A stretch of 64,000 bases of DNA from IMGVR_UViG_3300027668_000008:124001-188000, one strand, 5' to 3'; shown: positions 32,823-42,857, counted from the first letter of the stretch. Numbers and translations: made by a program. Notes: generated by a model from the sequence alone, not told the origin.

Positions 32823-34388
32823 TTAAGAAAAATTAGTTATACGATATTTAAGTGTTGCGTCTGCACCTGTTGATGTTGTTGTGTACTGAACAGTACCATC
32901 AGAGGCTAATAGTGTTAATCCTGCACCTACGTCTGCATTTTCAGTGAAGGCTTGTTCAAAAGTATAACCAGCAGTATTACTACCAGCAACTTTCATAACA
33001 CCCATTCGTCTTGCATTACCACGTTCAATAACAAAGTCTATTTCTGCATTAATTAAAACACTTGAATCAAAGTCAATTGCAGTGCTCGTTACTGAAGTAG
33101 TGTTATCAACTAATGTAAAACTTTTTCCTGGCTCTTGAGTATGTAAACCATAAGTTAGTTTATCACCTGCAATTAAACCAAATACTGCTTTACCATTATT
33201 TTGTAGGTTTGGGTGTGTTGCCTGTTGTGATACAGTTCTGTCGAACCCATCACCGAGGCTAATATTGTTGTCTGCATCAAAGTCAATAATTGGACAAGTA
33301 GGTGTTCCACCACTAGCAATGTTTGCCACGCCACAAGTTGTAAATGTATTAAACGAACTCGTAAACTCTTGTACTGTTACAGTTTTGATTGCTTCTTTGT
33401 ATATAAGTTCAAACAAAGAATTTGTTACTTTAACACCACGTGGGCCTGATCCTGATCCAACTGCTGAAAGTAAAATACCTGCAAAGTTATCGTGTATGTA
33501 ACAATTATTTAATATTACATTTGTAGCATCGTTATTACTATATAATCCAACATCTAATTTTGCAAAGTCACAGTTTTCAAATTTAACATTTTTAGTATCT
33601 GTTGAAGCAGTTTGTGTAATAATTACACCTGCTTTACCGTTGCTTAATGATGATGGATTAGTAACGTGTCTTCCTTTAAATCTAACGTTAGTAAACGTTA
33701 CCATGTTTGCTTGGTCAACTAAAAAGTTGTGATCATCTTGTGTATGATAAAATTGTATATTCGAAATGTTTATGTTTTTAGGTTTTAATGCTCCACCTAT
33801 TCCAACATTGGCTCCTACTTGTTGCTTACTATCAGAAGTTTCGCCAACATATCCTGAAACAGATGTTCTTTTAAGTATAGTAGCACCTGGACCGTCACCA
33901 ACAATGTTTGCATTCCTAGGAAACTTAATTGAATCAGATACAAGATACACGCCTGCAGGAAAGTAAACTGTTTTTAATGTTTCTTTGTTTGTTGCTTCAC
34001 GTGAATAAATTTGATTTAACATAAAGTTAATTTTAGCAGTATGATCCGTGACACCGTCTCCTTCAATGCCAAAATCTTTAGCATTAATGAAGTCATCTAA
34101 TTTGTTTTGGAGAGAACGTTGTATACTAGCACCACTTGATGTAGTTTGTGCAGTATATCCTACTTCAGCGCCTTTATATGTATAACTGTTAATACTTCCT
34201 AATATATCACTATATTGTGTTAATATTTCTGTATTACCAATAGCCGGTGCACCCTCTGATGTGGTTCCGTTACCAATGTATAATTTACGTTCGTCAATCA
34301 CCCAGCCAATTTCTGCACTTGACAGTTGTGGCAAGTCAGCGTTCAGACCCCTGCGATGTTGAATTTTTGATATTTGAATTACTGCCAT
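32823..34388 (-). CDS. Virion fibre/spike protein with pectate-lyase-like beta-helix
   Basis: N-terminal QHRRG..LPQLSSAEIGW..LYIGNG; AKDFGIEGDGVTDHT, VYFPAGVY; TATAAATA at 34406-34413. Confidence 0.8.
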   Translation of the reverse strand: MAVIQISKIQHRRGLNADLPQLSSAEIGWVIDERKLYIGNGTTSEGAPAIGNTEILTQYSDILGSINSYTYKGAEVGYTAQTTSSGASIQRSLQNKLDDFINAKDFGIEGDGVTDHTAKINFMLNQIYSREATNKETLKTVYFPAGVYLVSDSIKFPRNANIVGDGPGATILKRTSVSGYVGETSDSKQQVGANVGIGGALKPKNINISNIQFYHTQDDHNFLVDQANMVTFTNVRFKGRHVTNPSSLSNGKAGVIITQTASTDTKNVKFENCDFAKLDVGLYSNNDATNVILNNCYIHDNFAGILLSAVGSGSGPRGVKVTNSLFELIYKEAIKTVTVQEFTSSFNTFTTCGVANIASGGTPTCPIIDFDADNNISLGDGFDRTVSQQATHPNLQNNGKAVFGLIAGDKLTYGLHTQEPGKSFTLVDNTTSVTSTAIDFDSSVLINAEIDFVIERGNARRMGVMKVAGSNTAGYTFEQAFTENADVGAGLTLLASDGTVQYTTTSTGADATLKYRITNFS

Positions 34389-35165: not shown

Positions 35166-35528
35166 TTATTTTCTTTTATTTAAGGCACGTTTAGCCATTT
35201 TGTCAACTTGCGTTGTTGGCTCTAACTCAACATCAGATGCATTTGCAATAGACTGGTCGTCCTGTCCATCTGTGTTTTTAAATATAATAAGATCTTTATT
35301 ATAATCTGTAACTAAATTTTGTATAGATTGATTATTTTGGAATAGCTCACTAAAACTATCGTAAGATAAAGGCACACCTAAACGATTTGCCATAGAAGAA
35401 AATGCTTTCATAGAGATTTGTGTTTTAGCACCCATCTGTTCAGCACGGTTTCTAAGGAACAATAACAAACTTATAAGTTTGTCTATTCCGACTGGTGCTT
35501 TTTCTGTGATGAAATCACTTGCTTTCAT
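35166..35528 (-). CDS. Hypothetical, putative internal head protein
   Basis: N-terminus MKASDFITEK. Confidence 0.6.
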   Translation of the reverse strand: MKASDFITEKAPVGIDKLISLLLFLRNRAEQMGAKTQISMKAFSSMANRLGVPLSYDSFSELFQNNQSIQNLVTDYNKDLIIFKNTDGQDDQSIANASDVELEPTTQVDKMAKRALNKRK

Positions 35529-36529
35529 TATGAACGTTCTTGTCGATCTAAATCGTCAACGCCTTCTTGTCCAGAAGCGTCTGCGTCTAAGTCTATATCT
35601 AATGTATCATCGACTGCATTTACTTCTGCGTCTGCATCAGCATCTGCTACAGGCTCTTCAAGTTCAAGGTCGTCAGCAGTAGTTAAGTCTGTTCCAGACT
35701 CGTCTGCATTTCCAGTTAAAATACGTGATGCATTATCCATGTCGCCTCTTGCAGTTGTTAACGCATCATATAGTGCATCCAACGAACCTTTAGCGGCATT
35801 TATAAATGCTTCTGCTTTTTCATTACCCATTTCATCACGGATTTGATCCGTTAATGGAAGTAAATCTTCTGCCTGCATATCACTCACATCTTCTAACATA
35901 GATTGAATTCTGTCAACTAGGTCTTTTGATGCTAGTACTAATTCAGCACTCTCAACATCACCTTCGTTAATTTGTTTAGACTCTGCAATGCCTAATTGTT
36001 TTTTAGCACGTTTGTCTACCATTTGTAAGAAACGCACATTTGCTAAATTACTAGACATAATTTCATCAATCATATCTATAATTGGCATAAGTCCTGTCAT
36101 TAAAGTCGGGGGAACTGTTTGACCTTTTTTGTACATTTCTAAAGCACGTTTGGCTTTCATATAATTTTGTGGGCCTACTAGTAGTCTTAAAGCATTTGCT
36201 TTTCTACTTTGTGCCGCTGGAGATTCTTGTTCTGGTTCTACTTTACCATCATTGGGCTCAATCTCACCTTTTTCTTTTGTAGTTGGACCTTCGTTAACAC
36301 CTAAGTTATTTTCAATTTGCCATGCTTCAACTGTTTCTAAAACAACTTTAGACATCATATACTTCTTGCCCTCAGTTTCTTCTGCCATTTCTCTTTTAGC
36401 AGTTTTTATCATTTGGTTGGCGATGTCTTCGTTCATTTTGCTTAAATCAAAACCGAATCCAAAACGAGTAGACAGTAATTTGTTTAACTTACTACTTCTC
36501 GATACTTTGTTTAAATCATTTAATTCCAT
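35528..36529 (-). CDS. Putative prohead core/scaffold-like protein with acidic tail
   Basis: Multiple [LIV]-x-E sites (VNEG, IAES, INEG); acidic C-terminus; TAAATA upstream. Confidence 0.55.
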   Translation of the reverse strand: MELNDLNKVSRSSKLNKLLSTRFGFGFDLSKMNEDIANQMIKTAKREMAEETEGKKYMMSKVVLETVEAWQIENNLGVNEGPTTKEKGEIEPNDGKVEPEQESPAAQSRKANALRLLVGPQNYMKAKRALEMYKKGQTVPPTLMTGLMPIIDMIDEIMSSNLANVRFLQMVDKRAKKQLGIAESKQINEGDVESAELVLASKDLVDRIQSMLEDVSDMQAEDLLPLTDQIRDEMGNEKAEAFINAAKGSLDALYDALTTARGDMDNASRILTGNADESGTDLTTADDLELEEPVADADADAEVNAVDDTLDIDLDADASGQEGVDDLDRQERS

Positions 36530-36559
36530 GTGAGTTCCCTAATTCTATGTTATTACTAT

Positions 36560-37000
36560 TTAGTTGATTTTAATCTTTTTAATTGTTTCATCTAACTGTC
36601 CTCTAACGTAATTCTTATGGTATTCGCTCTCTTCATACCTAATATACATCAAATCTTTGCGAAATTCGTCATTTGCAGTACGATATCTTTGATGAAATAT
36701 CATCGAATCATTAGCAAACCTACTAAACTTCAAATCCTGTGCTTCAACTAGTTGTGCTTCTGTCTGTTGCCCTTGTAATGAAGCGACAGCCCATGCTAGA
36801 GCACTGTTTCGTAGTGTAAAGGAGTTAACTAACTCTCCGTTATCATATACTTGCCATACACCATTACGTTCTAAGCAATAGTATTTACCCACTTTAACAT
36901 GAGCACCATTTATTGATACAACGGGTAAGTTATCAGATTTTTCTTCTAAGAAGTTTTTAATCTTTGTTATACTTACTTTACTTTTTATTTTCTTTGACAT
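36560..37000 (-). CDS. Hypothetical protein
   Basis: Likely start ATG 37000 (ORF extends to 37039). Confidence 0.65.
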   Translation of the reverse strand: MSKKIKSKVSITKIKNFLEEKSDNLPVVSINGAHVKVGKYYCLERNGVWQVYDNGELVNSFTLRNSALAWAVASLQGQQTEAQLVEAQDLKFSRFANDSMIFHQRYRTANDEFRKDLMYIRYEESEYHKNYVRGQLDETIKKIKIN

Positions 37001-37184
37001 AGTAGAGATCACCATTTTTCTTTTTCCTATTGAGTACACTTTTATTCACTAACATAAATGCCAACTTTAGTTGACCTGGGCTTAACTCAGTCATTATAAT
37101 TGACTGCTTAAATTCTCCTAAAAAGTCTTCTTCTTCCTTTGTCAATGAAACTCTTGCTCCATCGGAAAACTTATAGTATGTCAT
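36978..37184 (-). CDS. Small hypothetical protein
   Basis: 68 aa, coupled to the upstream stop. Confidence 0.7.
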   Translation of the reverse strand: MTYYKFSDGARVSLTKEEEDFLGEFKQSIIMTELSPGQLKLAFMLVNKSVLNRKKKNGDLYYVKENKK

Positions 37185-38091
37185 TACTTGCCTTGTTGCG
37201 TCTTAATCCATGCTTTTGCAACAGGATTAGTATGCGGTGTTTCTGTGTATGCTTTCATTCTTCTATACATACTCAGTAATACACCCTTTAGGCTTTCATT
37301 ATTTGAATTGTCTACTACGAACATATTTCTACCAAAAAAGTTGTGGAATTTTCCAATGTTTGTTTGTACACTTTTCCACATTTTAGTAACTAGTTCGTTG
37401 GGTAATCTTCTATCTCTTTTAGCATTACGTTCTAATGCCGTATCTAAGTCAGTGTTAACAAACACCATTGCACAATCGTATCCGATTTTACGCAATTCTC
37501 CACTTAGATGTTCTATTTTGTCATAATCTTTACCGGTGCCATCTATAACTACGCCTAGGCGTCCATCTAAAAAAGATTGTTGTTTTATATCAGTTAAGGC
37601 TTTAGCACGTTGTCTTGTCGCTTGTCCGTCAGTACTAGCAAGTGCATCTGGATCTGTTAAATCAATATTGCTCTTTTTTGCTAGATACTCATAAGCATCG
37701 TCGGTGTTTATTATTTTATATCCTAAAGACACAAATGCAACATTCTTAGCAATAAAGCTCTTACCACTACCAGGACCACCTGCTAGGAATACTGCTTTAA
37801 AAATTGCGGGATCGTTTACACCTTCTTCAAGGTCAGTCAGTCTTTTTTTTTGACCTCGGTAGCAATGGATACTGTTTGTCCGGGTTTAATTTTGGAGCCT
37901 TGTCCTTGGGGTTTAGCGGATTTTGGCTTAATGGTTGGAGCATTAGGATTTGAAGTATCTATATCCATTTTCTTTAGGTCAATTTTAGTCGTAACACCTG
38001 GCTTCTTTGGATCGATAATTTCAACATTATCGCCAGCAACCTTAGTTACTTTACCTTGCATAGGTTCTTCAAATAAATCACTAATTCTCAT
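37184..38091 (-). CDS. P-loop kinase (AAA_33/Pnk-like) fused to the 84-aa upstream ORF via a -1 frameshift at A9 (37843-37851)
   Basis: Walker A in AVFLAGGPGSGKSF lies upstream of the first canonical start (GTG 37732); no ATG/GTG/TTG in frame between the in-frame TAA and Walker A; VVIDGTG and ERNAKR lid downstream. Confidence 0.7.
37837..38091 (-). CDS. 84-aa unshifted product (MRISDLFEE...)
   Basis: ORF ends AAA AAA AAA GAC TGA. Confidence 0.75.
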   Translation of the reverse strand: MRISDLFEEPMQGKVTKVAGDNVEIIDPKKPGVTTKIDLKKMDIDTSNPNAPTIKPKSAKPQGQGSKIKPGQTVSIATEVKKKD

Positions 38092-38092
38092 T

Positions 38093-38410
38093 TTAACTCC
38101 GTTTATTCAATGCTTGAACACGTTTACTTGCTGGGTTGATACGTTTAGTACGTTTTGATTTCAACTTCATTCTGGATCCAAGTTTTGCTTTAGTCATTTT
38201 TAGTTTAATACGTTTTCTTATATCAGGTGCTTTAAAACACGCACCAGGACTACTTACTATTTTACCTTTTAATCTACCAATTGAGCATCTGTACTTTCGT
38301 ACAACTTTGTTACCCGAACGGCCCCAAGCCATTTTGGTTTCATCTAAAGAAGTAGGATGTACTTCTTCGATAGGTGTATTTTCGTCGCTGAATAGTTCTA
38401 ATATAAGCAT
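38093..38410 (-). CDS. Small basic putative internal head protein
   Basis: MLILELF, LDE site, basic C-terminus; TAAATA upstream. Confidence 0.65.
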   Translation of the reverse strand: MLILELFSDENTPIEEVHPTSLDETKMAWGRSGNKVVRKYRCSIGRLKGKIVSSPGACFKAPDIRKRIKLKMTKAKLGSRMKLKSKRTKRINPASKRVQALNKRS

Positions 38411-38459
38411 AACACTACTATTTAGTTAAGTTTAATCGGTTTTAATTTTTTGTGAATTA

Positions 38460-38717
38460 CTATATGAATAAGTTGTAGGATAGTATGCCTACTGCACTGA
38501 TTAAAGAACCAATGATAGTCATACCCCACATGATAAGTTGAGATTGACGTTTTTCTCTATCTTTGACAACAGTGTCTCGGATTTCCCCAAGTACAGTTTC
38601 AATGCCGATAACTCGGCCCTCTAAATTGTCTAATTTTTCTTCCAATCGTGAATACCTCGCCGCACATAATTCTACATGGGCCTCTAGGCTTTCTTTCTCA
38701 ATTTCTCTTGTACTCAT
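38460..38717 (-). CDS. Coiled coil plus C-terminal TM protein (XhlA/holin-like architecture)
   Basis: SLEAHVELCAARYSRLEEKL coiled coil, then one TM. Confidence 0.6.
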   Translation of the reverse strand: MSTREIEKESLEAHVELCAARYSRLEEKLDNLEGRVIGIETVLGEIRDTVVKDREKRQSQLIMWGMTIIGSLISAVGILSYNLFI

Positions 38718-38737
38718 TCTCTTTTAGTTCCTGTTAC

Positions 38738-38840
38738 GCCTACCTGGGGCGGGTTGATAATTTCGGAGCCTTAATGAATGCCTTTGATTTGCCTATAAAT
38801 TGTTGCCTGTATGCCTAAGTTTGTTGCCTTAATTTTGCCT
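38738..38840 (-). repeat. Leader with eight AGGC (six AGGCA) motifs
   Basis: GCCT on the plus strand at 38738, 38768, 38780, 38791, 38805, 38813, 38826, 38837; TATAAATA at 38875-38882. Confidence 0.8.
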
Positions 38841-38926
38841 ATGTAACAAACGTTTATTACGTTTCTTACTAATGTATTTATAAAAGTCAAACAGTAGTAA
38901 AACACAAATATAATGTATAGGGTGTT

Positions 38927-39679
38927 TTACGCCTTTTTAATCTTATATTTCTTATGTACGTTTTGAATGTTCTTATCTCGGATTGCTTTGTATCCTATAA
39001 CTGCACCAACTGCCACACCTGCAATAGTTTTTGCGAATGTGTTACCAGTGTACGGACTTTTAGCATTTTGTGAAACTATACCAGTAACACTTTTGTTATA
39101 CGGTCCTGCTAAATCACTGCCTCTGGCATAATGATTAAGCATAAACCCTAAACGTGTTGCTCCTGCTTTTTGTTCATTTGGTAAAGCACGAGGCCAGTCT
39201 GAAATGATTCGTCTCATTGCAGTTAGTTTTGGATCTCTAATTTGTAGTGAACGTTCAACGGCAAGCATAGTACGTCTGTCTAATTGTGTATCTACTACAC
39301 CATTTTGTACGTTCTTTAAATATCTTTTAATTTGTGCAGTCGGAATACTGTATCCGCCTTTACGTTCCAATCCTGCAATTAAGTTATGCAAGTCTGTTGC
39401 ACCGGTTCTTACTCCGTCGAAGCCGTTGTATGACATAGTTTTCCTAGCATATGTACTTGCTTGTCCAGGATCAGTATAACGCATTGCTTGTACACCCATT
39501 AAGTGTGCATACACGTTCTTTGCAATATCTTCTTTATTTGATGTAGCGAATTGTGTTGGGTTTCTAAACAATCTTGCTTCAACTAGTTCATCGTTCATAA
39601 ATCCAAACATCTTTTGTTTAGGTTCAATTGTATGACCACCGTCCATTGCCGCCCATTCACTTGCAGTATACTTGTCCAT
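38927..39679 (-). CDS. Conserved phage hypothetical, putative virion protein
   Basis: LVE site near the N-terminus; C-terminal hydrophobic GVAVGAVIGY. Confidence 0.6.
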   Translation of the reverse strand: MDKYTASEWAAMDGGHTIEPKQKMFGFMNDELVEARLFRNPTQFATSNKEDIAKNVYAHLMGVQAMRYTDPGQASTYARKTMSYNGFDGVRTGATDLHNLIAGLERKGGYSIPTAQIKRYLKNVQNGVVDTQLDRRTMLAVERSLQIRDPKLTAMRRIISDWPRALPNEQKAGATRLGFMLNHYARGSDLAGPYNKSVTGIVSQNAKSPYTGNTFAKTIAGVAVGAVIGYKAIRDKNIQNVHKKYKIKKA

Positions 39680-39683
39680 TAAC

Positions 39684-40940
39684 TTATTTGCTCCAAGTTT
39701 TAGTTGCTGAGAAATTCAATGCATTGAATTCCATTCTATCATTTAGTTTAACTGCTCCACCGTCTATACCAAATGCTACAAATCCTTCATGGTTTGTAAC
39801 TCTGTATCCATTTTCAGTTTTTACAAATGTTCCAATTTTATCTACATTACTTAATTTACTAATTAATAATAGTTTAGCACTAATTATACGACGATACACT
39901 GCTAGTGTCAAGAGCAACGTATTACTATTGTCTGCTAAAAATTTCTTTTGTTGTTCAATTTTTTCAAAACGTTTTTGTGCCGCTGGACTTTCAGCGCCGC
40001 CTTTTAATTTTTCAACTTCTTTATTCATCTTATCATTATAATAATTCATAAAGTCTTGTAGGAACTTTGTCGGTTCACCGACTTGTTCCCCTGCTCTTAC
40101 ATTATTATTAATAAAAGGTTTAATAAACTTTGCAAATTCAGCCTGTAGTACTTGATCCATTTTAGGACCTACTTTTTTAAGTGTAGTACGCCCTGTTGCA
40201 ATAGTACCGTCTATAGCCTTTTCTTCGCTAGGTGTTAGTGTTGCAATACCGGATACATCTTTATAATTTGCGTCATCATACCATACATCTGCTGTAGGTT
40301 GTAAACCTCTAACACTGTAACCAAAATTTGCAGTCATTTCTGGTAGTGTAGCACCTGTATATTCTGTATGAAATACTATTCCGATTTTTGCTTTAGCGAC
40401 ACGTTTGCCAATAGCACTATCCACAGGAACTGCGTATGTAATAGTGTTAGGGGTAAACGTATAACAGTTGTCATCACCAACGTCTTCTGTTTTAACATCA
40501 CCTGGGCCAAAAAGGAAGTCGCCTTGTACAACTGATCCTATGCCTAATTTAGGTAATAGTTTAAACGCCATTAATAATTTTGCTTCTAGTGAAGGTTGCT
40601 CGGAATACCATTCTTTAATTTGTGCTACTGATTTAGCAACTTTAGGTGTCTTTGCATTAAACACTGATTTAGTGCCTACAAAGAATTTACTATCTTCTGG
40701 ATCTATTCCGCAAATAATTGCCGGGGCACCATCCCACTTAACAGTAACTTTACCTTCTGGTTGTCCGCCTTCTAATAAACCTTTAACTGCATCTAGATAA
40801 TTAAATGCTCTTTGGGCACCTGCGTAACCTTCATTAAAGATTAAGTCTTCAATATGTTCTAAGTGTGTGTTTTTACCTTCTGCTTCGTTAAGAATATTCC
40901 AGTAATGTGTTTTAGGTTCAAAAATTTCTTTTATAATCAT
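39684..40940 (-). CDS. ATP-dependent ligase-superfamily nucleotidyltransferase (RNA-ligase-like)
   Basis: KWDG (motif I), VGTKS (Ia), VQGDFLF (III), HEGFV (IV), AVKL (V). Confidence 0.6.
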   Translation of the reverse strand: MIIKEIFEPKTHYWNILNEAEGKNTHLEHIEDLIFNEGYAGAQRAFNYLDAVKGLLEGGQPEGKVTVKWDGAPAIICGIDPEDSKFFVGTKSVFNAKTPKVAKSVAQIKEWYSEQPSLEAKLLMAFKLLPKLGIGSVVQGDFLFGPGDVKTEDVGDDNCYTFTPNTITYAVPVDSAIGKRVAKAKIGIVFHTEYTGATLPEMTANFGYSVRGLQPTADVWYDDANYKDVSGIATLTPSEEKAIDGTIATGRTTLKKVGPKMDQVLQAEFAKFIKPFINNNVRAGEQVGEPTKFLQDFMNYYNDKMNKEVEKLKGGAESPAAQKRFEKIEQQKKFLADNSNTLLLTLAVYRRIISAKLLLISKLSNVDKIGTFVKTENGYRVTNHEGFVAFGIDGGAVKLNDRMEFNALNFSATKTWSK

Positions 40941-40941
40941 G

Positions 40942-41205
40942 TTATGCCGCTCGCTTACTTCTGGCTAAGATAGCTCTTACTTCGTCGTCTAAGTCTAGTG
41001 ATTTAATAACCATTGCTAGTGCTTCTACATCAACAGTTGCTTGTGTTACTTCTGGTGCTTGTGCTGTAGGCTCTACTGTAGGCTCTACTGTAGGCTTTGC
41101 TTTAGGTATTGCGTTTGCTTTTTGCTGGCGCTTTTTTGCTTGTTGCTTTTTACGTTGTTTACGACTTTTCTTTTCAGTTAAATCGTTTAACTCATTAAGT
41201 TTCAT
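40942..41205 (-). CDS. Small putative internal head protein
   Basis: MKLNELNDLTEK, basic stretch, PTVE repeats. Confidence 0.6.
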   Translation of the reverse strand: MKLNELNDLTEKKSRKQRKKQQAKKRQQKANAIPKAKPTVEPTVEPTAQAPEVTQATVDVEALAMVIKSLDLDDEVRAILARSKRAA

Positions 41206-41747
41206 TATGCTTTGCTCCCAGCCTTATTAAGTAGAGCATCTAATTGGGCTTTTTGCTCATCTGTTAAATTTTGTAATGTTTGTGATATATCATCTGGAAG
41301 TTTTTCAGGATTCTTTTGTTCTTCGCCTCTAATAAATCTACCAAACACTTGGTCTGCTATGTTAACTAACTGCGGATCTACTATCTTAACAATTTTCATA
41401 AAAGTGTTAGCACCTTGAAACGGAGTTTTAGGTTTTAAGTAGTAATTCTGTGATGCATATGCAACTACAAGTTTTCCAACTTTTTTAATGTTAGCATCTG
41501 AAAGTTTTAATGCAGGTATATTCAATACCTTTTCAACATCATTTTTAAACATATGTTTAAACCAATTAGCAAAGGCTTGCATTGGTTCTGCGTCAAATTG
41601 CTCAGCATTTTCAATTTCGACATCTGCGAAATTTTGTTGTGCTTTTTCATACATTCCCTTAACTTTTTTACCAAGTTCTTTTAGTTCTTGTATTTTTGCT
41701 TTGCTGTCTGTGACTCGTTTTCCAAAGTCAATTTCATCTATTCTCAT
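41205..41747 (-). CDS. Hypothetical, putative internal head protein
   Basis: N-terminus MRIDEI. Confidence 0.6.
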   Translation of the reverse strand: MRIDEIDFGKRVTDSKAKIQELKELGKKVKGMYEKAQQNFADVEIENAEQFDAEPMQAFANWFKHMFKNDVEKVLNIPALKLSDANIKKVGKLVVAYASQNYYLKPKTPFQGANTFMKIVKIVDPQLVNIADQVFGRFIRGEEQKNPEKLPDDISQTLQNLTDEQKAQLDALLNKAGSKA

Positions 41748-41986
41748 TTTTTTAACTTCTTTAATCCGTTATTAAACTTGGCAGGGTCCTGCCTCTTAAT
41801 TGCTAGTAGCAATTTACGTTCCATTTCTTCTACAACTTCATCATCGTAACACTCTCTAATTAAGTTAACTAGGTTTATGGCGCCTGCAATAATATGTTGA
41901 GCCCTTGATTCGATAAGATGTACACGATCTCGAGGAATTGCTATTTTGTCTAGTTCTTCTAGTAGACTACGATGTTTGTGTTGCAT
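41744..41986 (-). CDS. Conserved small phage protein
   Basis: 80 aa; TAAATA boxes upstream. Confidence 0.75.
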   Translation of the reverse strand: MQHKHRSLLEELDKIAIPRDRVHLIESRAQHIIAGAINLVNLIRECYDDEVVEEMERKLLLAIKRQDPAKFNNGLKKLKK

Positions 41987-42074
41987 TAAAATTATCTCCG
42001 TATTATATGTTATTTATTTAAAAAATTTGGTTAAATACATATTATTAAGTTAACTAAAGAAGGAGTCTGATAAT

Positions 42075-42857
42075 ATGAACTATGATTCACACCATGCAAT
42101 GCTTTCTGCCTGTGCATACACGGATCTAAACCCATCTATTGAAGCAACTTTTAGTAAAATAGGGTATAAAACCATCCATTTTTTGAATACCGATGGGGCT
42201 CAAGCATATTTGTTGAGCAATGATGACCTTATTACGATTGCTTTTAGAGGTACTGAACCTAGTCAACCTAGCGATCTTATTGCTGATGCCAAAAGTTGGA
42301 AAAGTAAGAGTAAAGTTGCAGGTAAAGTACATGATGGATTTTATGATGAAATTGAAAAGATTTGGGATGAAATTGAAGAATTTGCAAATAACAACCCAAA
42401 AAAACAAATGACTATTACCGGTCACAGTTTAGGTGCCGCGATGGCAACACTCTGTGCCGCAAGGTTACAAGATAAGTTTGAGGATTTAGCATTATATACA
42501 TATGGTTCGCCACGTGTTGGTAATAAAGAATTCATAAACAGTTGTAAATTTAAACACTATCGTTGGGTTAATAACAATGATGCGGTAACTAGAGTTCCAC
42601 CTGCGTTTATTGGTTTTAGACATCACGGTCAAATGAAATATTTAAACCATTTTGGCAATATTAGAAACGGGTTAAGTACATGGCAACGTTTCAAAGACAG
42701 GATACGAGGAAGAATTTCTGCTTGGAAAAAGTGGCAATTATTTGATGGTGCATATGATCACAGTATTAGTGATTACCATAGAAAAATTAATAAAGCACAT
42801 TTATCTAAAACAAAAGATGGTAAAGTGATACTAGACCAATTTAAACCTAAAGACTAA
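42075..42857 (+). CDS. Lipase class 3
   Basis: IAFRGTE, VHDGFY, ITGHSLGAAMA, YGSPRVGN, NNDAVTRVPP, DHSISDY; AGGAG RBS; TAAATA at 42032. Confidence 0.92.
   Translation: MNYDSHHAMLSACAYTDLNPSIEATFSKIGYKTIHFLNTDGAQAYLLSNDDLITIAFRGTEPSQPSDLIADAKSWKSKSKVAGKVHDGFYDEIEKIWDEIEEFANNNPKKQMTITGHSLGAAMATLCAARLQDKFEDLALYTYGSPRVGNKEFINSCKFKHYRWVNNNDAVTRVPPAFIGFRHHGQMKYLNHFGNIRNGLSTWQRFKDRIRGRISAWKKWQLFDGAYDHSISDYHRKINKAHLSKTKDGKVILDQFKPKD

What the first reader, a model, noticed from the sequence alone, without database searches (positions are those of the whole stretch)
35166..41747. Cluster of genes sharing an N-terminal M-x-[ILA]-x-[DE]-[ILF] motif and [LIV]-x-E sites
Seven ORFs start MKASDF, MELNDL, MRISDL, MLILEL, MIIKEI, MKLNEL and MRIDEI. 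This pattern is rare elsewhere in the window. Internal ITE, LFE, LEE, LDE, LNE and LTE sites precede the mature-looking domains. This parallels the T4 capsid-targeting sequence (MKTYQEFIAE) and gp21 cleavage after L/I-x-E. Inference: a cassette of head-packaged proteins injected with the DNA.
Basis: partly seen in the sequence, partly recalled or inferred. Interest (0 to 1): 0.6.

Follow-up and report, generated by a model that had tools for sequence, protein, structure and literature searches.

The report
Capsid-targeting tags on jumbo-phage proteins
Seven neighbouring genes of an uncultured 307-kb marine phage carry a conserved short N-terminal tag followed by a Leu/Ile-x-Glu site, which most likely sends them into the assembling phage head and is then clipped off, as in phage T4, though this was inferred and not measured.

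Summary
The window lies in a 306.7-kb IMG/VR phage genome related to Pseudomonas phage PA5oct and the Rak2 group. This genome has T4-type head genes, including a gp21-family prohead protease. The strict motif M-x-[ILA]-x-[DE]-[ILF] opens 12 of 397 ORFs, against 2-3 expected. Seven lie within 11 consecutive genes in the window, four in a second island, and one at the gp67/68 position beside the protease. Ten of the 12 have [LIV]-x-E within residues 4-16, against 15% of other ORFs. The 12 proteins share nothing else. In 18+17 related metagenomic loci the tag and the x-E site stay conserved while the spacers vary. DUF6267 homologues of cultured cyanophages start exactly where the predicted cut falls. 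PA5oct counterparts at the same positions (gp150, 230, 237, 238) were found in virions by mass spectrometry. Best reading: these are T4-like capsid-targeting propeptides. Packaging, cleavage and injection are all inferred. Cargo includes a ligase-like DUF6267 protein and a P-loop kinase. The "MRISDL" ORF is the kinase's N-terminus, split off at a conserved A9 slippage run.

The parts
41744..41986 (-). First gene of the cassette (80 aa). It has no tag. It is an orthologue of PA5oct EST35_0225 and of CBB_292, which is annotated structural.
   Evidence: phrog_11854 'virion structural protein', E 1e-16. blastp to PA5_0225 (E 2e-18) and CBB_292. A promoter-like word upstream is shared only with the gp67-like head gene.
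41205..41747 (-). ORF7, 180 aa, tag MRIDEI. Function unknown.
   Evidence: The tag is conserved in orthologues as MRIDEL, MKISEL, MRLDEL, MNLNEL and MKINEF, while residues 7-20 vary. No family match above threshold.
40942..41205 (-). ORF6, 87 aa, tag MKLNEL followed by LTE|K; basic (pI 9.9). It is a deletion remnant of a 746-767 aa protein of relatives.
   Evidence: Relatives encode a protein opening MKLNEV... The window ORF matches only that protein's last ~50 residues plus the tag. The full-length form has no Pfam or PHROG match.
39684..40940 (-). ORF5, 418 aa. A ~22-aa N-terminal extension (MIIKEIFEP...ILNE|AEG) precedes a DUF6267 domain, which is a probable ligase-like nucleotidyltransferase.
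   Evidence: DUF6267 E 8e-108, matching from residue 24. 114 of 120 close homologues start M-x-h-x-E-[IV] and have a conserved [LI]-x-E|[AS] before GKNxHLEH. Cyanophage Syn1 and DSL-LC02 homologues start at the HLEH domain. In the AF2 model, residues 1-25 have pLDDT below 50. K68-W-D70-G71 is invariant. The only long structural matches are RNA/DNA ligases, Z 5.7-6.7 over 173-193 residues.
38927..39679 (-). 250-aa gene without the tag, with a hydrophobic segment near the C-terminus. Conserved in relatives.
   Evidence: No family match.
38460..38717 (-). 85-aa gene without the tag, with a C-terminal hydrophobic segment. Highly conserved in relatives.
38093..38410 (-). ORF4, 105 aa. Tag MLILELFSDE, a variable spacer, then a conserved [LI]-x-E|T-[KR]-M-A-W-G. 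The predicted mature part is very basic (whole-protein pI 10.9).
   Evidence: In orthologues the tag is nearly invariant (seven of eight distinct sequences; L028 reads MLILELFDDD), the spacer differs in length and sequence, and the x-E|T[KR]MAWG junction is invariant. pI.
37837..38091 (-). ORF3, 84 aa in the zero frame. Tag MRISDLFE|E, then a small beta domain and a basic Pro-rich linker. [quoted passage not shown]
   Evidence: Relatives L018-L027 encode a single 294-302 aa ORF. In the AF2 model of the L019 fusion, residues 1-9 and 81-90 have pLDDT below 50 and residues 11-76 form a beta domain.
37843..37851 (-). A9 run where the reading frame must shift by -1 (or the mRNA gain one A) to join ORF3 to the kinase.
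   Evidence: Sequence. The same A9 and the same split occur in five distinct relatives; A9 is in frame in two others. An independent DNA contig has no indel there.
37184..37851 (-). P-loop kinase frame (GGPGSGKS; adenylate-kinase / polynucleotide-kinase-like). It has no start codon of its own ahead of the P-loop and is preceded by LEE|G.
   Evidence: AAA_33 and Zeta_toxin. phrog_12810, ATPase and polynucleotide-kinase PHROGs. Adenylate kinases in the PDB at E 8e-4. [LI]-x-E|[GA]-[VI]-N-D-P is invariant in all relatives.
36560..37015 (-). 151-aa gene without the tag (MVISTMSKK...). Conserved in relatives.
   Evidence: No family match.
35528..36529 (-). ORF2, 333 aa, tag MELNDLN (invariant in relatives), acidic (pI 4.3). 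Homologue of the virion proteins PA5oct EST35_0237 and CBB_298.
   Evidence: phrog_14154 'virion structural protein', E 5e-14. tblastn/blastp to PA5oct 0237 (annotated ESI-MS/MS) and CBB_298 (annotated structural). N-terminal conservation.
35166..35528 (-). ORF1, 120 aa, tag MKASDFITE|K, the closest look-alike of the T4 capsid-targeting sequence. Probable counterpart of PA5oct EST35_0238 (VKIKDILVE|S), a virion protein by MS.
   Evidence: M1 and E9 are invariant in 10 orthologues. It occupies the same position as PA5oct 0238, between the ORF2 homologue and the exonuclease. hhalign is colinear from residue 1, E 0.002, but probability is only 14%.

Best explanation
The shared N-terminus M-[KR]-h-x-[DE]-h, usually followed within 2-20 residues by [LIV]-x-E, is a modular capsid-targeting propeptide of the T4 kind.

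Proposed mechanism: during head assembly the tag binds the scaffolding core of the prohead. Unrelated proteins are thereby enclosed when the gp23-type shell closes. The gp21-family prohead protease then cuts after the Glu and releases the mature protein inside the capsid. From there at least part of the cargo leaves with the DNA at infection.

The window holds one of two variable islands of such cargo genes:
- small basic proteins (ORF4, ORF6)
- an acidic 333-aa virion protein (ORF2)
- a DUF6267 ligase-like enzyme (ORF5)
- a P-loop kinase whose long propeptide has two predicted cuts and whose synthesis needs a frame change at an A9 run

Shown here: the motif, its enrichment and clustering; its conservation and modularity; the presence of the protease; virion detection of the PA5oct counterparts.

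Inferred: binding to the core, cleavage, retention in the head and injection.
For: 1. Enrichment and clustering: 12 ORFs against about 2-3 expected; 7 in 11 consecutive genes; 0 of 20,000 permutations reach this.
2. The x-E site follows the tag in 10 of 12 proteins against 15% of other ORFs (Fisher P 7e-7).
3. The genome has Peptidase_S77/gp21, a gp23-type capsid protein, a scaffold and a portal. The 71-aa protein at the gp67/68 position carries the tag. Its PA5oct orthologue gp150 (MKINDIITE|G) is a virion protein.
4. The 12 tagged proteins share no similarity beyond about 10 residues.
5. Conservation in 18 + 17 related loci: tag classes and the Glu are kept while spacers change. Examples are ORF4 [LI]xE|T[KR]MAWG, the kinase [LI]xE|[GA][VI]NDP, ORF1 with M1 and E9 invariant, and island 2.
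6. Modularity: DUF6267 proteins of cultured cyanophages begin exactly at the predicted cut, whereas 114 of 120 close homologues carry the extension.
7. Predicted cut sites lie in low-confidence (pLDDT below 50) segments just before folded domains.
8. The cassette is syntenic with a PA5oct region (primase-helicase, 0225..., 0237, 0238, 0239, exonuclease, fibre, RNR) in which 11 of 15 genes are annotated ESI-MS/MS virion proteins. There 0230, 0237 and 0238 carry the tag. Genome-wide in PA5oct, 5 of 10 strict-tag ORFs are MS-positive against a 93/461 background (binomial P 0.03).
9. T4 background: the CTS is the first 10 residues of IPIII, gp21 cuts after L/I-x-E, propeptides run 7-65 residues, and the internal-protein loci vary with only the CTS conserved (PMC9026906; PMC3012670; PMC8442874).
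Against: - There are no proteomic, structural or genetic data for this phage.
- The PA5oct MS list also contains obvious non-structural enzymes (RNR, thymidylate synthase), so 'MS-positive' is not proof of packaging.
- PA5oct gp228 carries the tag but was not detected.
- Only ORF2, and weakly ORF1, are sequence homologues of PA5oct virion proteins. The others correspond only by position.
- ORF7 has no conserved x-E site. In one island-2 protein the residue two before Glu varies (I/V/A/G).
- Late-promoter evidence is weak for the window cassette.
- The protease-substrate complex prediction gave no answer.
Confidence: 0.68

Rival explanations
1. The tag does send the proteins into the prohead, but they are assembly-only core or scaffold components, like T4 gp22, gp67 and gp68. 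They would be cut into pieces and expelled before DNA packaging. They would not be cargo that stays in the head and is injected.
For: One tagged protein sits at the gp67/68 position. T4 core proteins are processed by the same protease and mostly leave the head (PMC9026906). ORF2 and the 899-aa island-2 protein are acidic and rich in x-E sites.
Against: The PA5oct counterparts gp150, gp230, gp237 and gp238 were found in mature virions. Folded enzymes (DUF6267, kinase) with a single predicted cut just before the domain look like cargo, not scaffold.
Confidence: 0.15
2. The N-terminal motif is a recognition tag for some other machinery. Candidates are the phage-encoded Clp-type unfoldase/protease system, an N-terminal degron, or a membrane or secretion targeting signal. 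It would have nothing to do with the capsid.
For: The genome encodes a ClpA-like protein (778 aa, genome 74604-76940, read from its N-terminus and not tested). PA5oct encodes ClpX, ClpP, ClpS and ClpA. Short N-terminal tags are used by such systems (general knowledge).
Against: The tag co-occurs with a gp21-type cleavage site. It is present on the head-module core protein. Counterparts are virion proteins in PA5oct. ORF1's tag resembles the T4 CTS.
Confidence: 0.08
3. The pattern is a nucleotide-level feature of the start of translation (A/T-rich early codons, translational coupling in tightly packed operons) or a relic of common descent. It would not be a protein signal.
For: Several of the genes overlap the preceding stop (ATGA/TAATG). 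The genome is 36% G+C, which favours K, I, N, E and D codons.
Against: Shuffled N-termini and position-specific frequencies give only 2-3 matches. Orthologues substitute within residue classes (I/L/F, D/E, K/R), which indicates selection on the protein. The pattern is absent from most other genes, including highly expressed structural ones. There is no paralogy beyond the tag.
Confidence: 0.05

Closest known systems
T4 internal proteins IPI, IPII, IPIII and Alt: capsid-targeting sequence plus gp21 cleavage
   Same: A short N-terminal tag sits on otherwise unrelated proteins and ends in L/I-x-E. A gp21-family protease is encoded in the same genome. The cargo loci vary while the tag is conserved. 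Cargo includes small basic proteins and an enzyme (Alt in T4). ORF1's MKASDFITE matches MKTYQEFIAE in M-K at the start and in [DE]-F-I-x-E.
   Different: - The consensus is one residue shorter, with different early positions (hydrophobic at 3, acidic at 5).
- At least 12 tagged proteins lie in three places, some of them 350-900 aa.
- Some propeptides are long and have two predicted cuts (the kinase, about 90 aa).
- The phage is a PA5oct/Rak2-type jumbo myovirus, not a T-even.
- Nothing has been shown experimentally.
T4 prohead core proteins gp67 and gp68
   Same: A small tagged protein (71 aa) lies between portal and protease, as genes 67 and 68 do in T4. It is an orthologue of PA5oct gp150.
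   Different: No sequence similarity to T4 gp67 or gp68 was tested or found. The PHROG family (13986) is of unknown function.
PA5oct virion proteins EST35_0150, 0230, 0237, 0238 and CBB_298, CBB_292
   Same: Syntenic positions. ORF2 is homologous to 0237 and CBB_298. The same N-terminal tag and x-E site occur (MKINDIITE, MRLDEI, MFLKDVKITE, VKIKDILVE). They were detected in virions by ESI-MS/MS.
   Different: The gene content between the conserved anchors differs almost completely. The PA5oct paper does not mention cleavage, propeptides or a targeting signal.
phiKZ / SPN3US inner-body and ejection proteins
   Same: Jumbo phages that load many proteins into the head and process them after Glu with a T4-related protease.
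   Different: The cleavage motif there is S/A-x-E, the protease family is different, and no short common N-terminal tag is described (PMC9026906). No sequence similarity.
T4 Pnkp + RNA ligase, and fungal Trl1 (ligase plus kinase RNA repair)
   Same: A ligase-like nucleotidyltransferase (KxDG invariant; structural matches to Rnl2, REL1 and the Trl1 ligase domain) is encoded near a P-loop kinase.
   Different: Fold scores are middling (Z below 8). No phosphatase or CPD domain was seen. Substrates are unknown. T4's enzymes are not known to be packaged.
Recoding at A-runs (dnaX-type -1 frameshift; transcriptional slippage in IS elements)
   Same: A conserved A9 run is followed two codons later by a zero-frame stop. 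The downstream frame is conserved and has no start codon.
   Different: No conserved stimulatory hairpin or upstream SD-like element was found. Products were not observed.

Membership tests
T4-type capsid-targeted, gp21-processed head proteins | A gp21-family (Peptidase_S77) prohead protease in the same genome | tested here: met
   PF03420 E 3.3e-29 at genome 234942-235391. phrog_207 head maturation protease, E 1e-59. It is flanked by portal, scaffold and a gp23-type capsid protein.
T4-type capsid-targeted, gp21-processed head proteins | A common N-terminal tag of about 10 residues on otherwise unrelated proteins | tested here: met
   12 ORFs carry it against 2-3 expected. They share no similarity beyond the tag. 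It is conserved in orthologues.
T4-type capsid-targeted, gp21-processed head proteins | An L/I-x-E cleavage site at the end of the tag or propeptide | tested here: met
   Present in 10 of 12 within residues 4-16 against 59 of 385 others. The Glu is invariant in orthologue alignments of ORF1, ORF4, ORF5 and the kinase.
T4-type capsid-targeted, gp21-processed head proteins | Sequence likeness to the T4 CTS MKTYQEFIAE | tested here: inconclusive
   ORF1's MKASDFITE shares M-K and [DE]-F-I-x-E but is one residue shorter. The other tags share only the residue classes.
T4-type capsid-targeted, gp21-processed head proteins | Physical presence of the mature protein in the virion head | tested here: inconclusive
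   There is only indirect evidence. PA5oct 0150, 0230, 0237, 0238 and CBB_298, CBB_292 are annotated as MS-detected virion proteins. There are no data for this phage, and MS does not say head or tail.
T4-type capsid-targeted, gp21-processed head proteins | Neo-N-termini after Glu; encapsidation of a reporter fused to the tag; ejection into the host | not testable with these tools
   This needs proteomics or genetics on a cultured relative.
ATP-dependent ligase / covalent nucleotidyltransferase superfamily (for DUF6267) | Motif I, K-x-D-G, with the catalytic lysine | tested here: met
   K68-W69-D70-G71 is invariant across 35 sequences down to 28% identity.
ATP-dependent ligase / covalent nucleotidyltransferase superfamily (for DUF6267) | Nucleotidyltransferase fold | tested here: inconclusive
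   Foldseek found nothing at E <= 0.001. In VIA-align the only long alignments are RNA/DNA ligases (5cot Z 6.7 over 182 aa, 1xdn Z 6.6 over 186, 9r3w Z 6.3 over 193, 1s68 Z 6.0 over 177), all below the tool's Z 8 caution line. The PDB sequence search found no relative.
Programmed -1 frameshift / transcriptional slippage | A conserved slippery run, and a downstream frame kept open without a start codon | tested here: met
   A9 followed by GAC TGA occurs in the window and in five distinct relatives. The kinase frame with its P-loop stays intact at about 54% identity. Other relatives encode an in-frame or fused gene. The DNA is confirmed in an independent run.
Programmed -1 frameshift / transcriptional slippage | A stimulatory RNA structure, or direct evidence of the shifted product or an A10 transcript | tested here: not met
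   No downstream structure exceeds shuffled controls. No RNA contig bridged the run with enough flank, and no indel was reported.

The most novel reading that the evidence does not exclude
The tag is a readable address label for the whole capsid-internal proteome of PA5oct/Rak2-type jumbo phages. The inner-body components of this group are still unidentified (phAPEC6 and 121Q show an inner body with no phiKZ-like proteins; PMC7247149). In this marine clade the label would load a pre-made nucleic-acid repair or modification pair into the head for delivery with the DNA. The pair is a DUF6267 ligase-like enzyme and a kinase. The dose of the kinase would be set by slippage at a conserved A9 run, which yields a short tagged beta-domain protein and a long tagged kinase from one gene.
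Probability: 0.2. Interest if true: 0.75.

Novelty: new member of a known kind. Interest (0 to 1): 0.55.

Why it matters
If the tag works as in T4, it is a simple sequence rule. The rule would pick out, from sequence alone, proteins that uncultured jumbo phages carry inside their capsids and may deliver into the host. That class is hard to find and often holds anti-defence or take-over functions.

It gives concrete candidates for the unidentified inner-body or ejection proteins of PA5oct/Rak2-type phages. These candidates can be tested at once by re-searching existing PA5oct virion mass spectra for peptides that begin after the predicted Glu.

It also suggests that DUF6267, a very large uncharacterised family of marine phage proteins, is ligase-like and is capsid-loaded in some lineages.

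Finally, it adds a candidate recoding site inside a cargo gene.

Tried and rejected
- Complex prediction of the protease with ORF4 residues 1-60: no answer, score 0.00. This is not evidence either way.
- Foldseek of the DUF6267 model against the PDB: no match at E <= 0.001. PDB sequence search: only chance hits.
- Papers mentioning DUF6267: none.
- Papers on cleavage or propeptides in Rak2-type phages: none found. The RaK2 paper only infers capsid-protein cleavage from gel mobility.
- PA5oct supplementary MS tables are not held, so peptide-level N-termini could not be checked.
- T4 late promoter TATAAATA: only 22 copies in the genome and, among the tagged genes, upstream only of one island-2 gene (genome 67266-67493), none in the window cassette. 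The late-like word ATAAATA[CG] precedes three island-2 genes (two with the strict tag, one with a near-match tag) but none in the window cassette.
- Island 2 could not be compared with PA5oct. The anchors match (0299, 0310), but PA5oct has fibre- and adhesin-like proteins there without the tag.
- Downstream RNA structure at the A9 site: none beyond shuffles.
- RNA contigs: pieces of the cassette occur in three metatranscriptome runs. None bridges the A9 run with 31 nt on both sides, and contigs cannot show minor A10 transcripts or prove transcription.
- Paralogy among the tagged proteins: rejected.
- The 68-aa ORF at 36978-37184 has no counterpart in relatives and was not counted as a gene.

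Full report
**What the window is**

The window is bases 124001-188000 of a single 306,714-bp IMG/VR virus record (36% G+C, CheckV completeness 87%). The genome encodes a T4-type head module far outside the window:
- a gp23-family major capsid protein (PF07068, E 2e-99)
- a Peptidase_S77/gp21 prohead protease (E 3e-29; phrog_207 E 1e-59)
- a scaffold and a portal

The capsid protein is 59-65% identical to those of jumbo myoviruses. These include Sinorhizobium phage Phosso, Vibrio phage 2.275.O, Pseudomonas phage PA5oct and Rak2-type coliphages. The phage is therefore an uncultured marine relative of the PA5oct/Rak2 group.

**The observation**

I made a crude non-overlapping ORF set for the whole genome (397 ORFs). 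The strict pattern M-x-[ILA]-x-[DE]-[ILF] opens 12 of them. Expected counts are 1.9 to 2.8, depending on the null (composition, position-specific frequencies, or shuffled N-termini). Poisson P is about 4e-5.

The 12 ORFs fall in three places:
- seven within 11 consecutive genes in the window (0 of 20,000 permutations give this)
- four in a second island at genome 59.9-68.8 kb
- one 71-aa ORF (MDLNDLFE|K) between portal and protease, where T4 has its core genes 67 and 68

An unbiased scan of residue-class patterns in positions 2-10 puts 'acidic 5, hydrophobic 6 and 7, acidic 9' first, with 6 observed against 0.39 expected.

[LIV]-x-E follows within residues 4-16 in 10 of the 12, against 59 of 385 other ORFs (Fisher P 7e-7). 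Beyond the first ~10 residues the 12 proteins show no similarity to each other.

**Conservation**

The search for related loci gave 18 loci around ORF2 (54-100% identity) and 19 around an island-2 protein.

In every orthologue group the tag is kept by residue class while neighbouring residues drift:
- ORF7: MRIDEI, MKISEL, MRLDEL, MNLNEL, MKINEF
- ORF5: MIIKEIFEP, MLITEIFEP, MLINEIFIP, MKALEFIIE
- ORF1: MKASDFITE, MKAEEFIIE, MRFEEIVIE, MKIVELTE, with M1 and E9 invariant
- ORF2: MELNDLN, invariant

The predicted cut sites are conserved as junctions:
- ORF4: a nearly invariant tag (MLILELFSDE in seven of eight distinct sequences), a spacer of varying length and sequence, then always [LI]-x-E|T-[KR]-M-A-W-G
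- Kinase: always [LI]-x-E|[GA]-[VI]-N-D-P just before the P-loop domain
- Island 2: the same behaviour, for example MRA[KR][DQ]F[LI]xE|Y and MKIWE[IV]T...VxE|[DE]

**Modularity**

ORF5 is a DUF6267 protein (E 8e-108), and the Pfam match starts at residue 24.

The word search hit its ceiling, with all 8,000 scored candidates significant. Among the 120 best homologues listed, 114 begin M-x-h-x-E-[IV]. They also have a conserved W-L-[LI]-x-E|[AS] immediately before the GKNxHLEH start of the domain.

DUF6267 proteins of the cultured T4-like cyanophages Syn1 and DSL-LC02 begin at that HLEH block and lack the extension. The extension is therefore an add-on that ends exactly at the predicted cleavage site.

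In the AlphaFold model, residues 1-25 have pLDDT below 50 and the rest is folded (mean pLDDT 75.9). In the model of an in-frame kinase homologue, the two low-confidence segments are residues 1-9 and 81-90. These are the tag and the linker that ends in L-E-E|G.

**Link to virions**

The cassette is syntenic with PA5oct 148-160 kb and CBB 213-219 kb. The shared order is primase-helicase, an 80-aa protein, a variable block, the ORF2 homologue, a small protein, exonuclease, a fibre-like protein, then ribonucleotide reductase.

In PA5oct, 11 of the 15 genes between 0225 and 0239 are annotated as ESI-MS/MS virion proteins.
- ORF2 is homologous to 0237 and to CBB_298, both annotated structural.
- The 80-aa gene matches a 'virion structural protein' PHROG.
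- ORF1 aligns colinearly but weakly with 0238 (hhalign E 0.002, probability 14%).

PA5oct 0237 (MFLKDVKITE), 0238 (VKIKDILVE), 0230 (MRLDEI) and the portal-adjacent 0150 (MKINDIITE) carry the tag and are MS-positive.

Genome-wide in PA5oct, 5 of 10 strict-tag ORFs are MS-positive against a background of 93 of 461 (P 0.03; PMC7318152). That MS list also holds clear non-structural enzymes, so it is supportive but not decisive. The PA5oct, RaK2 and phAPEC6 papers do not describe a targeting tag or cleavage sites.

phAPEC6 and 121Q have an inner body whose proteins are unknown.

**Comparison with T4**

In T4, the first 10 residues of IPIII (MKTYQEFIAE) suffice for encapsidation. gp21 cuts after L/I-x-E, and propeptides range from 7 to 65 residues. 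The internal-protein loci are highly variable, with only the tag conserved. Alt, an enzyme, is loaded the same way (PMC9026906; PMC3012670; PMC8442874).

The present tags share the logic and, for ORF1, the ...[DE]-F-I-x-E core. The consensus is one residue shorter, and the set is larger and more diverse.

**What the cargo is**

DUF6267 has an invariant K-W-D-G. Its only long structural matches are RNA/DNA ligases, at middling scores. I read it as a probable ligase-like nucleotidyltransferase, with moderate confidence.

The kinase is AAA_33/Zeta-like, with weak adenylate-kinase and polynucleotide-kinase similarity.

ORF4 and ORF6 are small and basic, like the T4 internal proteins. ORF6 is a remnant of a ~750-aa ORFan. 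ORF1, ORF2 and ORF7 have no assignable function.

**The A9 site**

ORF3 ends GTC AAA AAA AAA GAC TGA. The kinase continues in the -1 frame with its P-loop and no upstream start codon.

The same A9 and the same split occur in five distinct relatives. Two others have A9 in frame, and six have a fused gene without the run. An independent DNA run covers the site without an indel.

A sequencing error or a pseudogene is therefore unlikely. A -1 frameshift, or the addition of one A by transcriptional slippage, is the likely way the full-length kinase is made. No stimulatory structure was found, and the available RNA contigs cannot decide.

**Regulation**

The genome has an early-like word (GGTTGACA, 26 genes) and a late-like word (ATAAATA[CG], 31 genes). 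The late-like word precedes the portal, fibre genes and three island-2 genes, two with the strict tag and one with a near-match tag. In the window cassette only weaker variants occur (CTAAATAGTA before ORF2 and ORF4). The first gene of the cassette shares a 20-nt promoter-like word with the gp67-like head gene alone. This hints at co-regulation and no more.

**Verdict**

The main rival is that some tagged proteins are assembly-only core proteins rather than delivered cargo. Packaging, cleavage and injection remain inferences. They could be tested quickly on PA5oct.

Noticed in passing
window 37843-37851 (minus strand), with 37184-38091: A conserved A9 run splits a tagged 84-aa ORF from a P-loop kinase frame that has no start codon. 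The same arrangement occurs in five distinct relatives, A9 is in frame in two, and the gene is fused without the run in six. This is a candidate -1 frameshift or transcriptional slippage site. An independent DNA run shows no indel there.
   Followed up: yes
window 40942-41205; L012:3402-5642: The 87-aa ORF6 keeps only the N-terminal tag and the last ~50 residues of a 746-767 aa protein of relatives. That protein has no Pfam or PHROG match.
   Followed up: partly
genome-wide; window 41987-42020 region and genome 236534-236570: Promoter-like words: GGTTGACA before 26 genes (early-like) and ATAAATA[CG] before 31 genes, many of them structural (late-like). The word TTTTTTAA(A)TAAATAACAT(T)ATAATA occurs only before the first cassette gene and before the gp67-like head gene.
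   Followed up: partly
genome 59888-68833 (outside the window; L029): A second island holds tagged proteins of 354, 899, 75 and 163 aa, plus near-matches of 117 and 191 aa. Metabolic-looking genes are mixed in: an SGNH-like gene, an NT5C-domain 751-aa protein and a nucleotidyltransferase-like gene. Tags and x-E sites are conserved in 17 related loci.
   Followed up: partly
genome-wide N-termini: A second over-represented N-terminal class pattern was found: small at 2, acidic at 6, hydrophobic at 8 and 9 (9 ORFs against 1.24 expected). It is unexplained.
   Followed up: no
window 42075-42857 (+ strand): This is the only plus-strand gene in this stretch. It contains a GHSLG serine-hydrolase (lipase-type) motif, read by eye, and is conserved in relatives in the same divergent orientation. 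It was not scanned against families.
   Followed up: no
L028:5912-6970: One relative carries a radical-SAM gene (PF04055, E 3e-13) inserted in the cassette between the DUF6267 gene and the 230-aa gene.
   Followed up: no
L048:1913-7285: A 1790-aa protein has the N-terminus MKFKDL... Its last ~350 residues are homologous to the 354-aa tagged island-2 protein, so the same cargo domain is fused behind a very long N-terminal region.
   Followed up: no
window 39684-40940 and phage records (Syn1, S-CAM3, P-HM2 and others): DUF6267 is present in about 400 cultured T4-like cyanophage, pelagiphage and Methylophilales phage genomes, always annotated hypothetical. It usually lies next to a cytidylyltransferase and downstream of the primase-helicase and MazG.
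   Followed up: partly
window 32823-34388: A 521-aa fibre-like protein has a conserved N-terminus (MAVIQISKIQHRRGL...). It matches the N-terminus of PA5oct virion protein 0241 and of CBB_302, and is preceded by the late-like promoter word.
   Followed up: no
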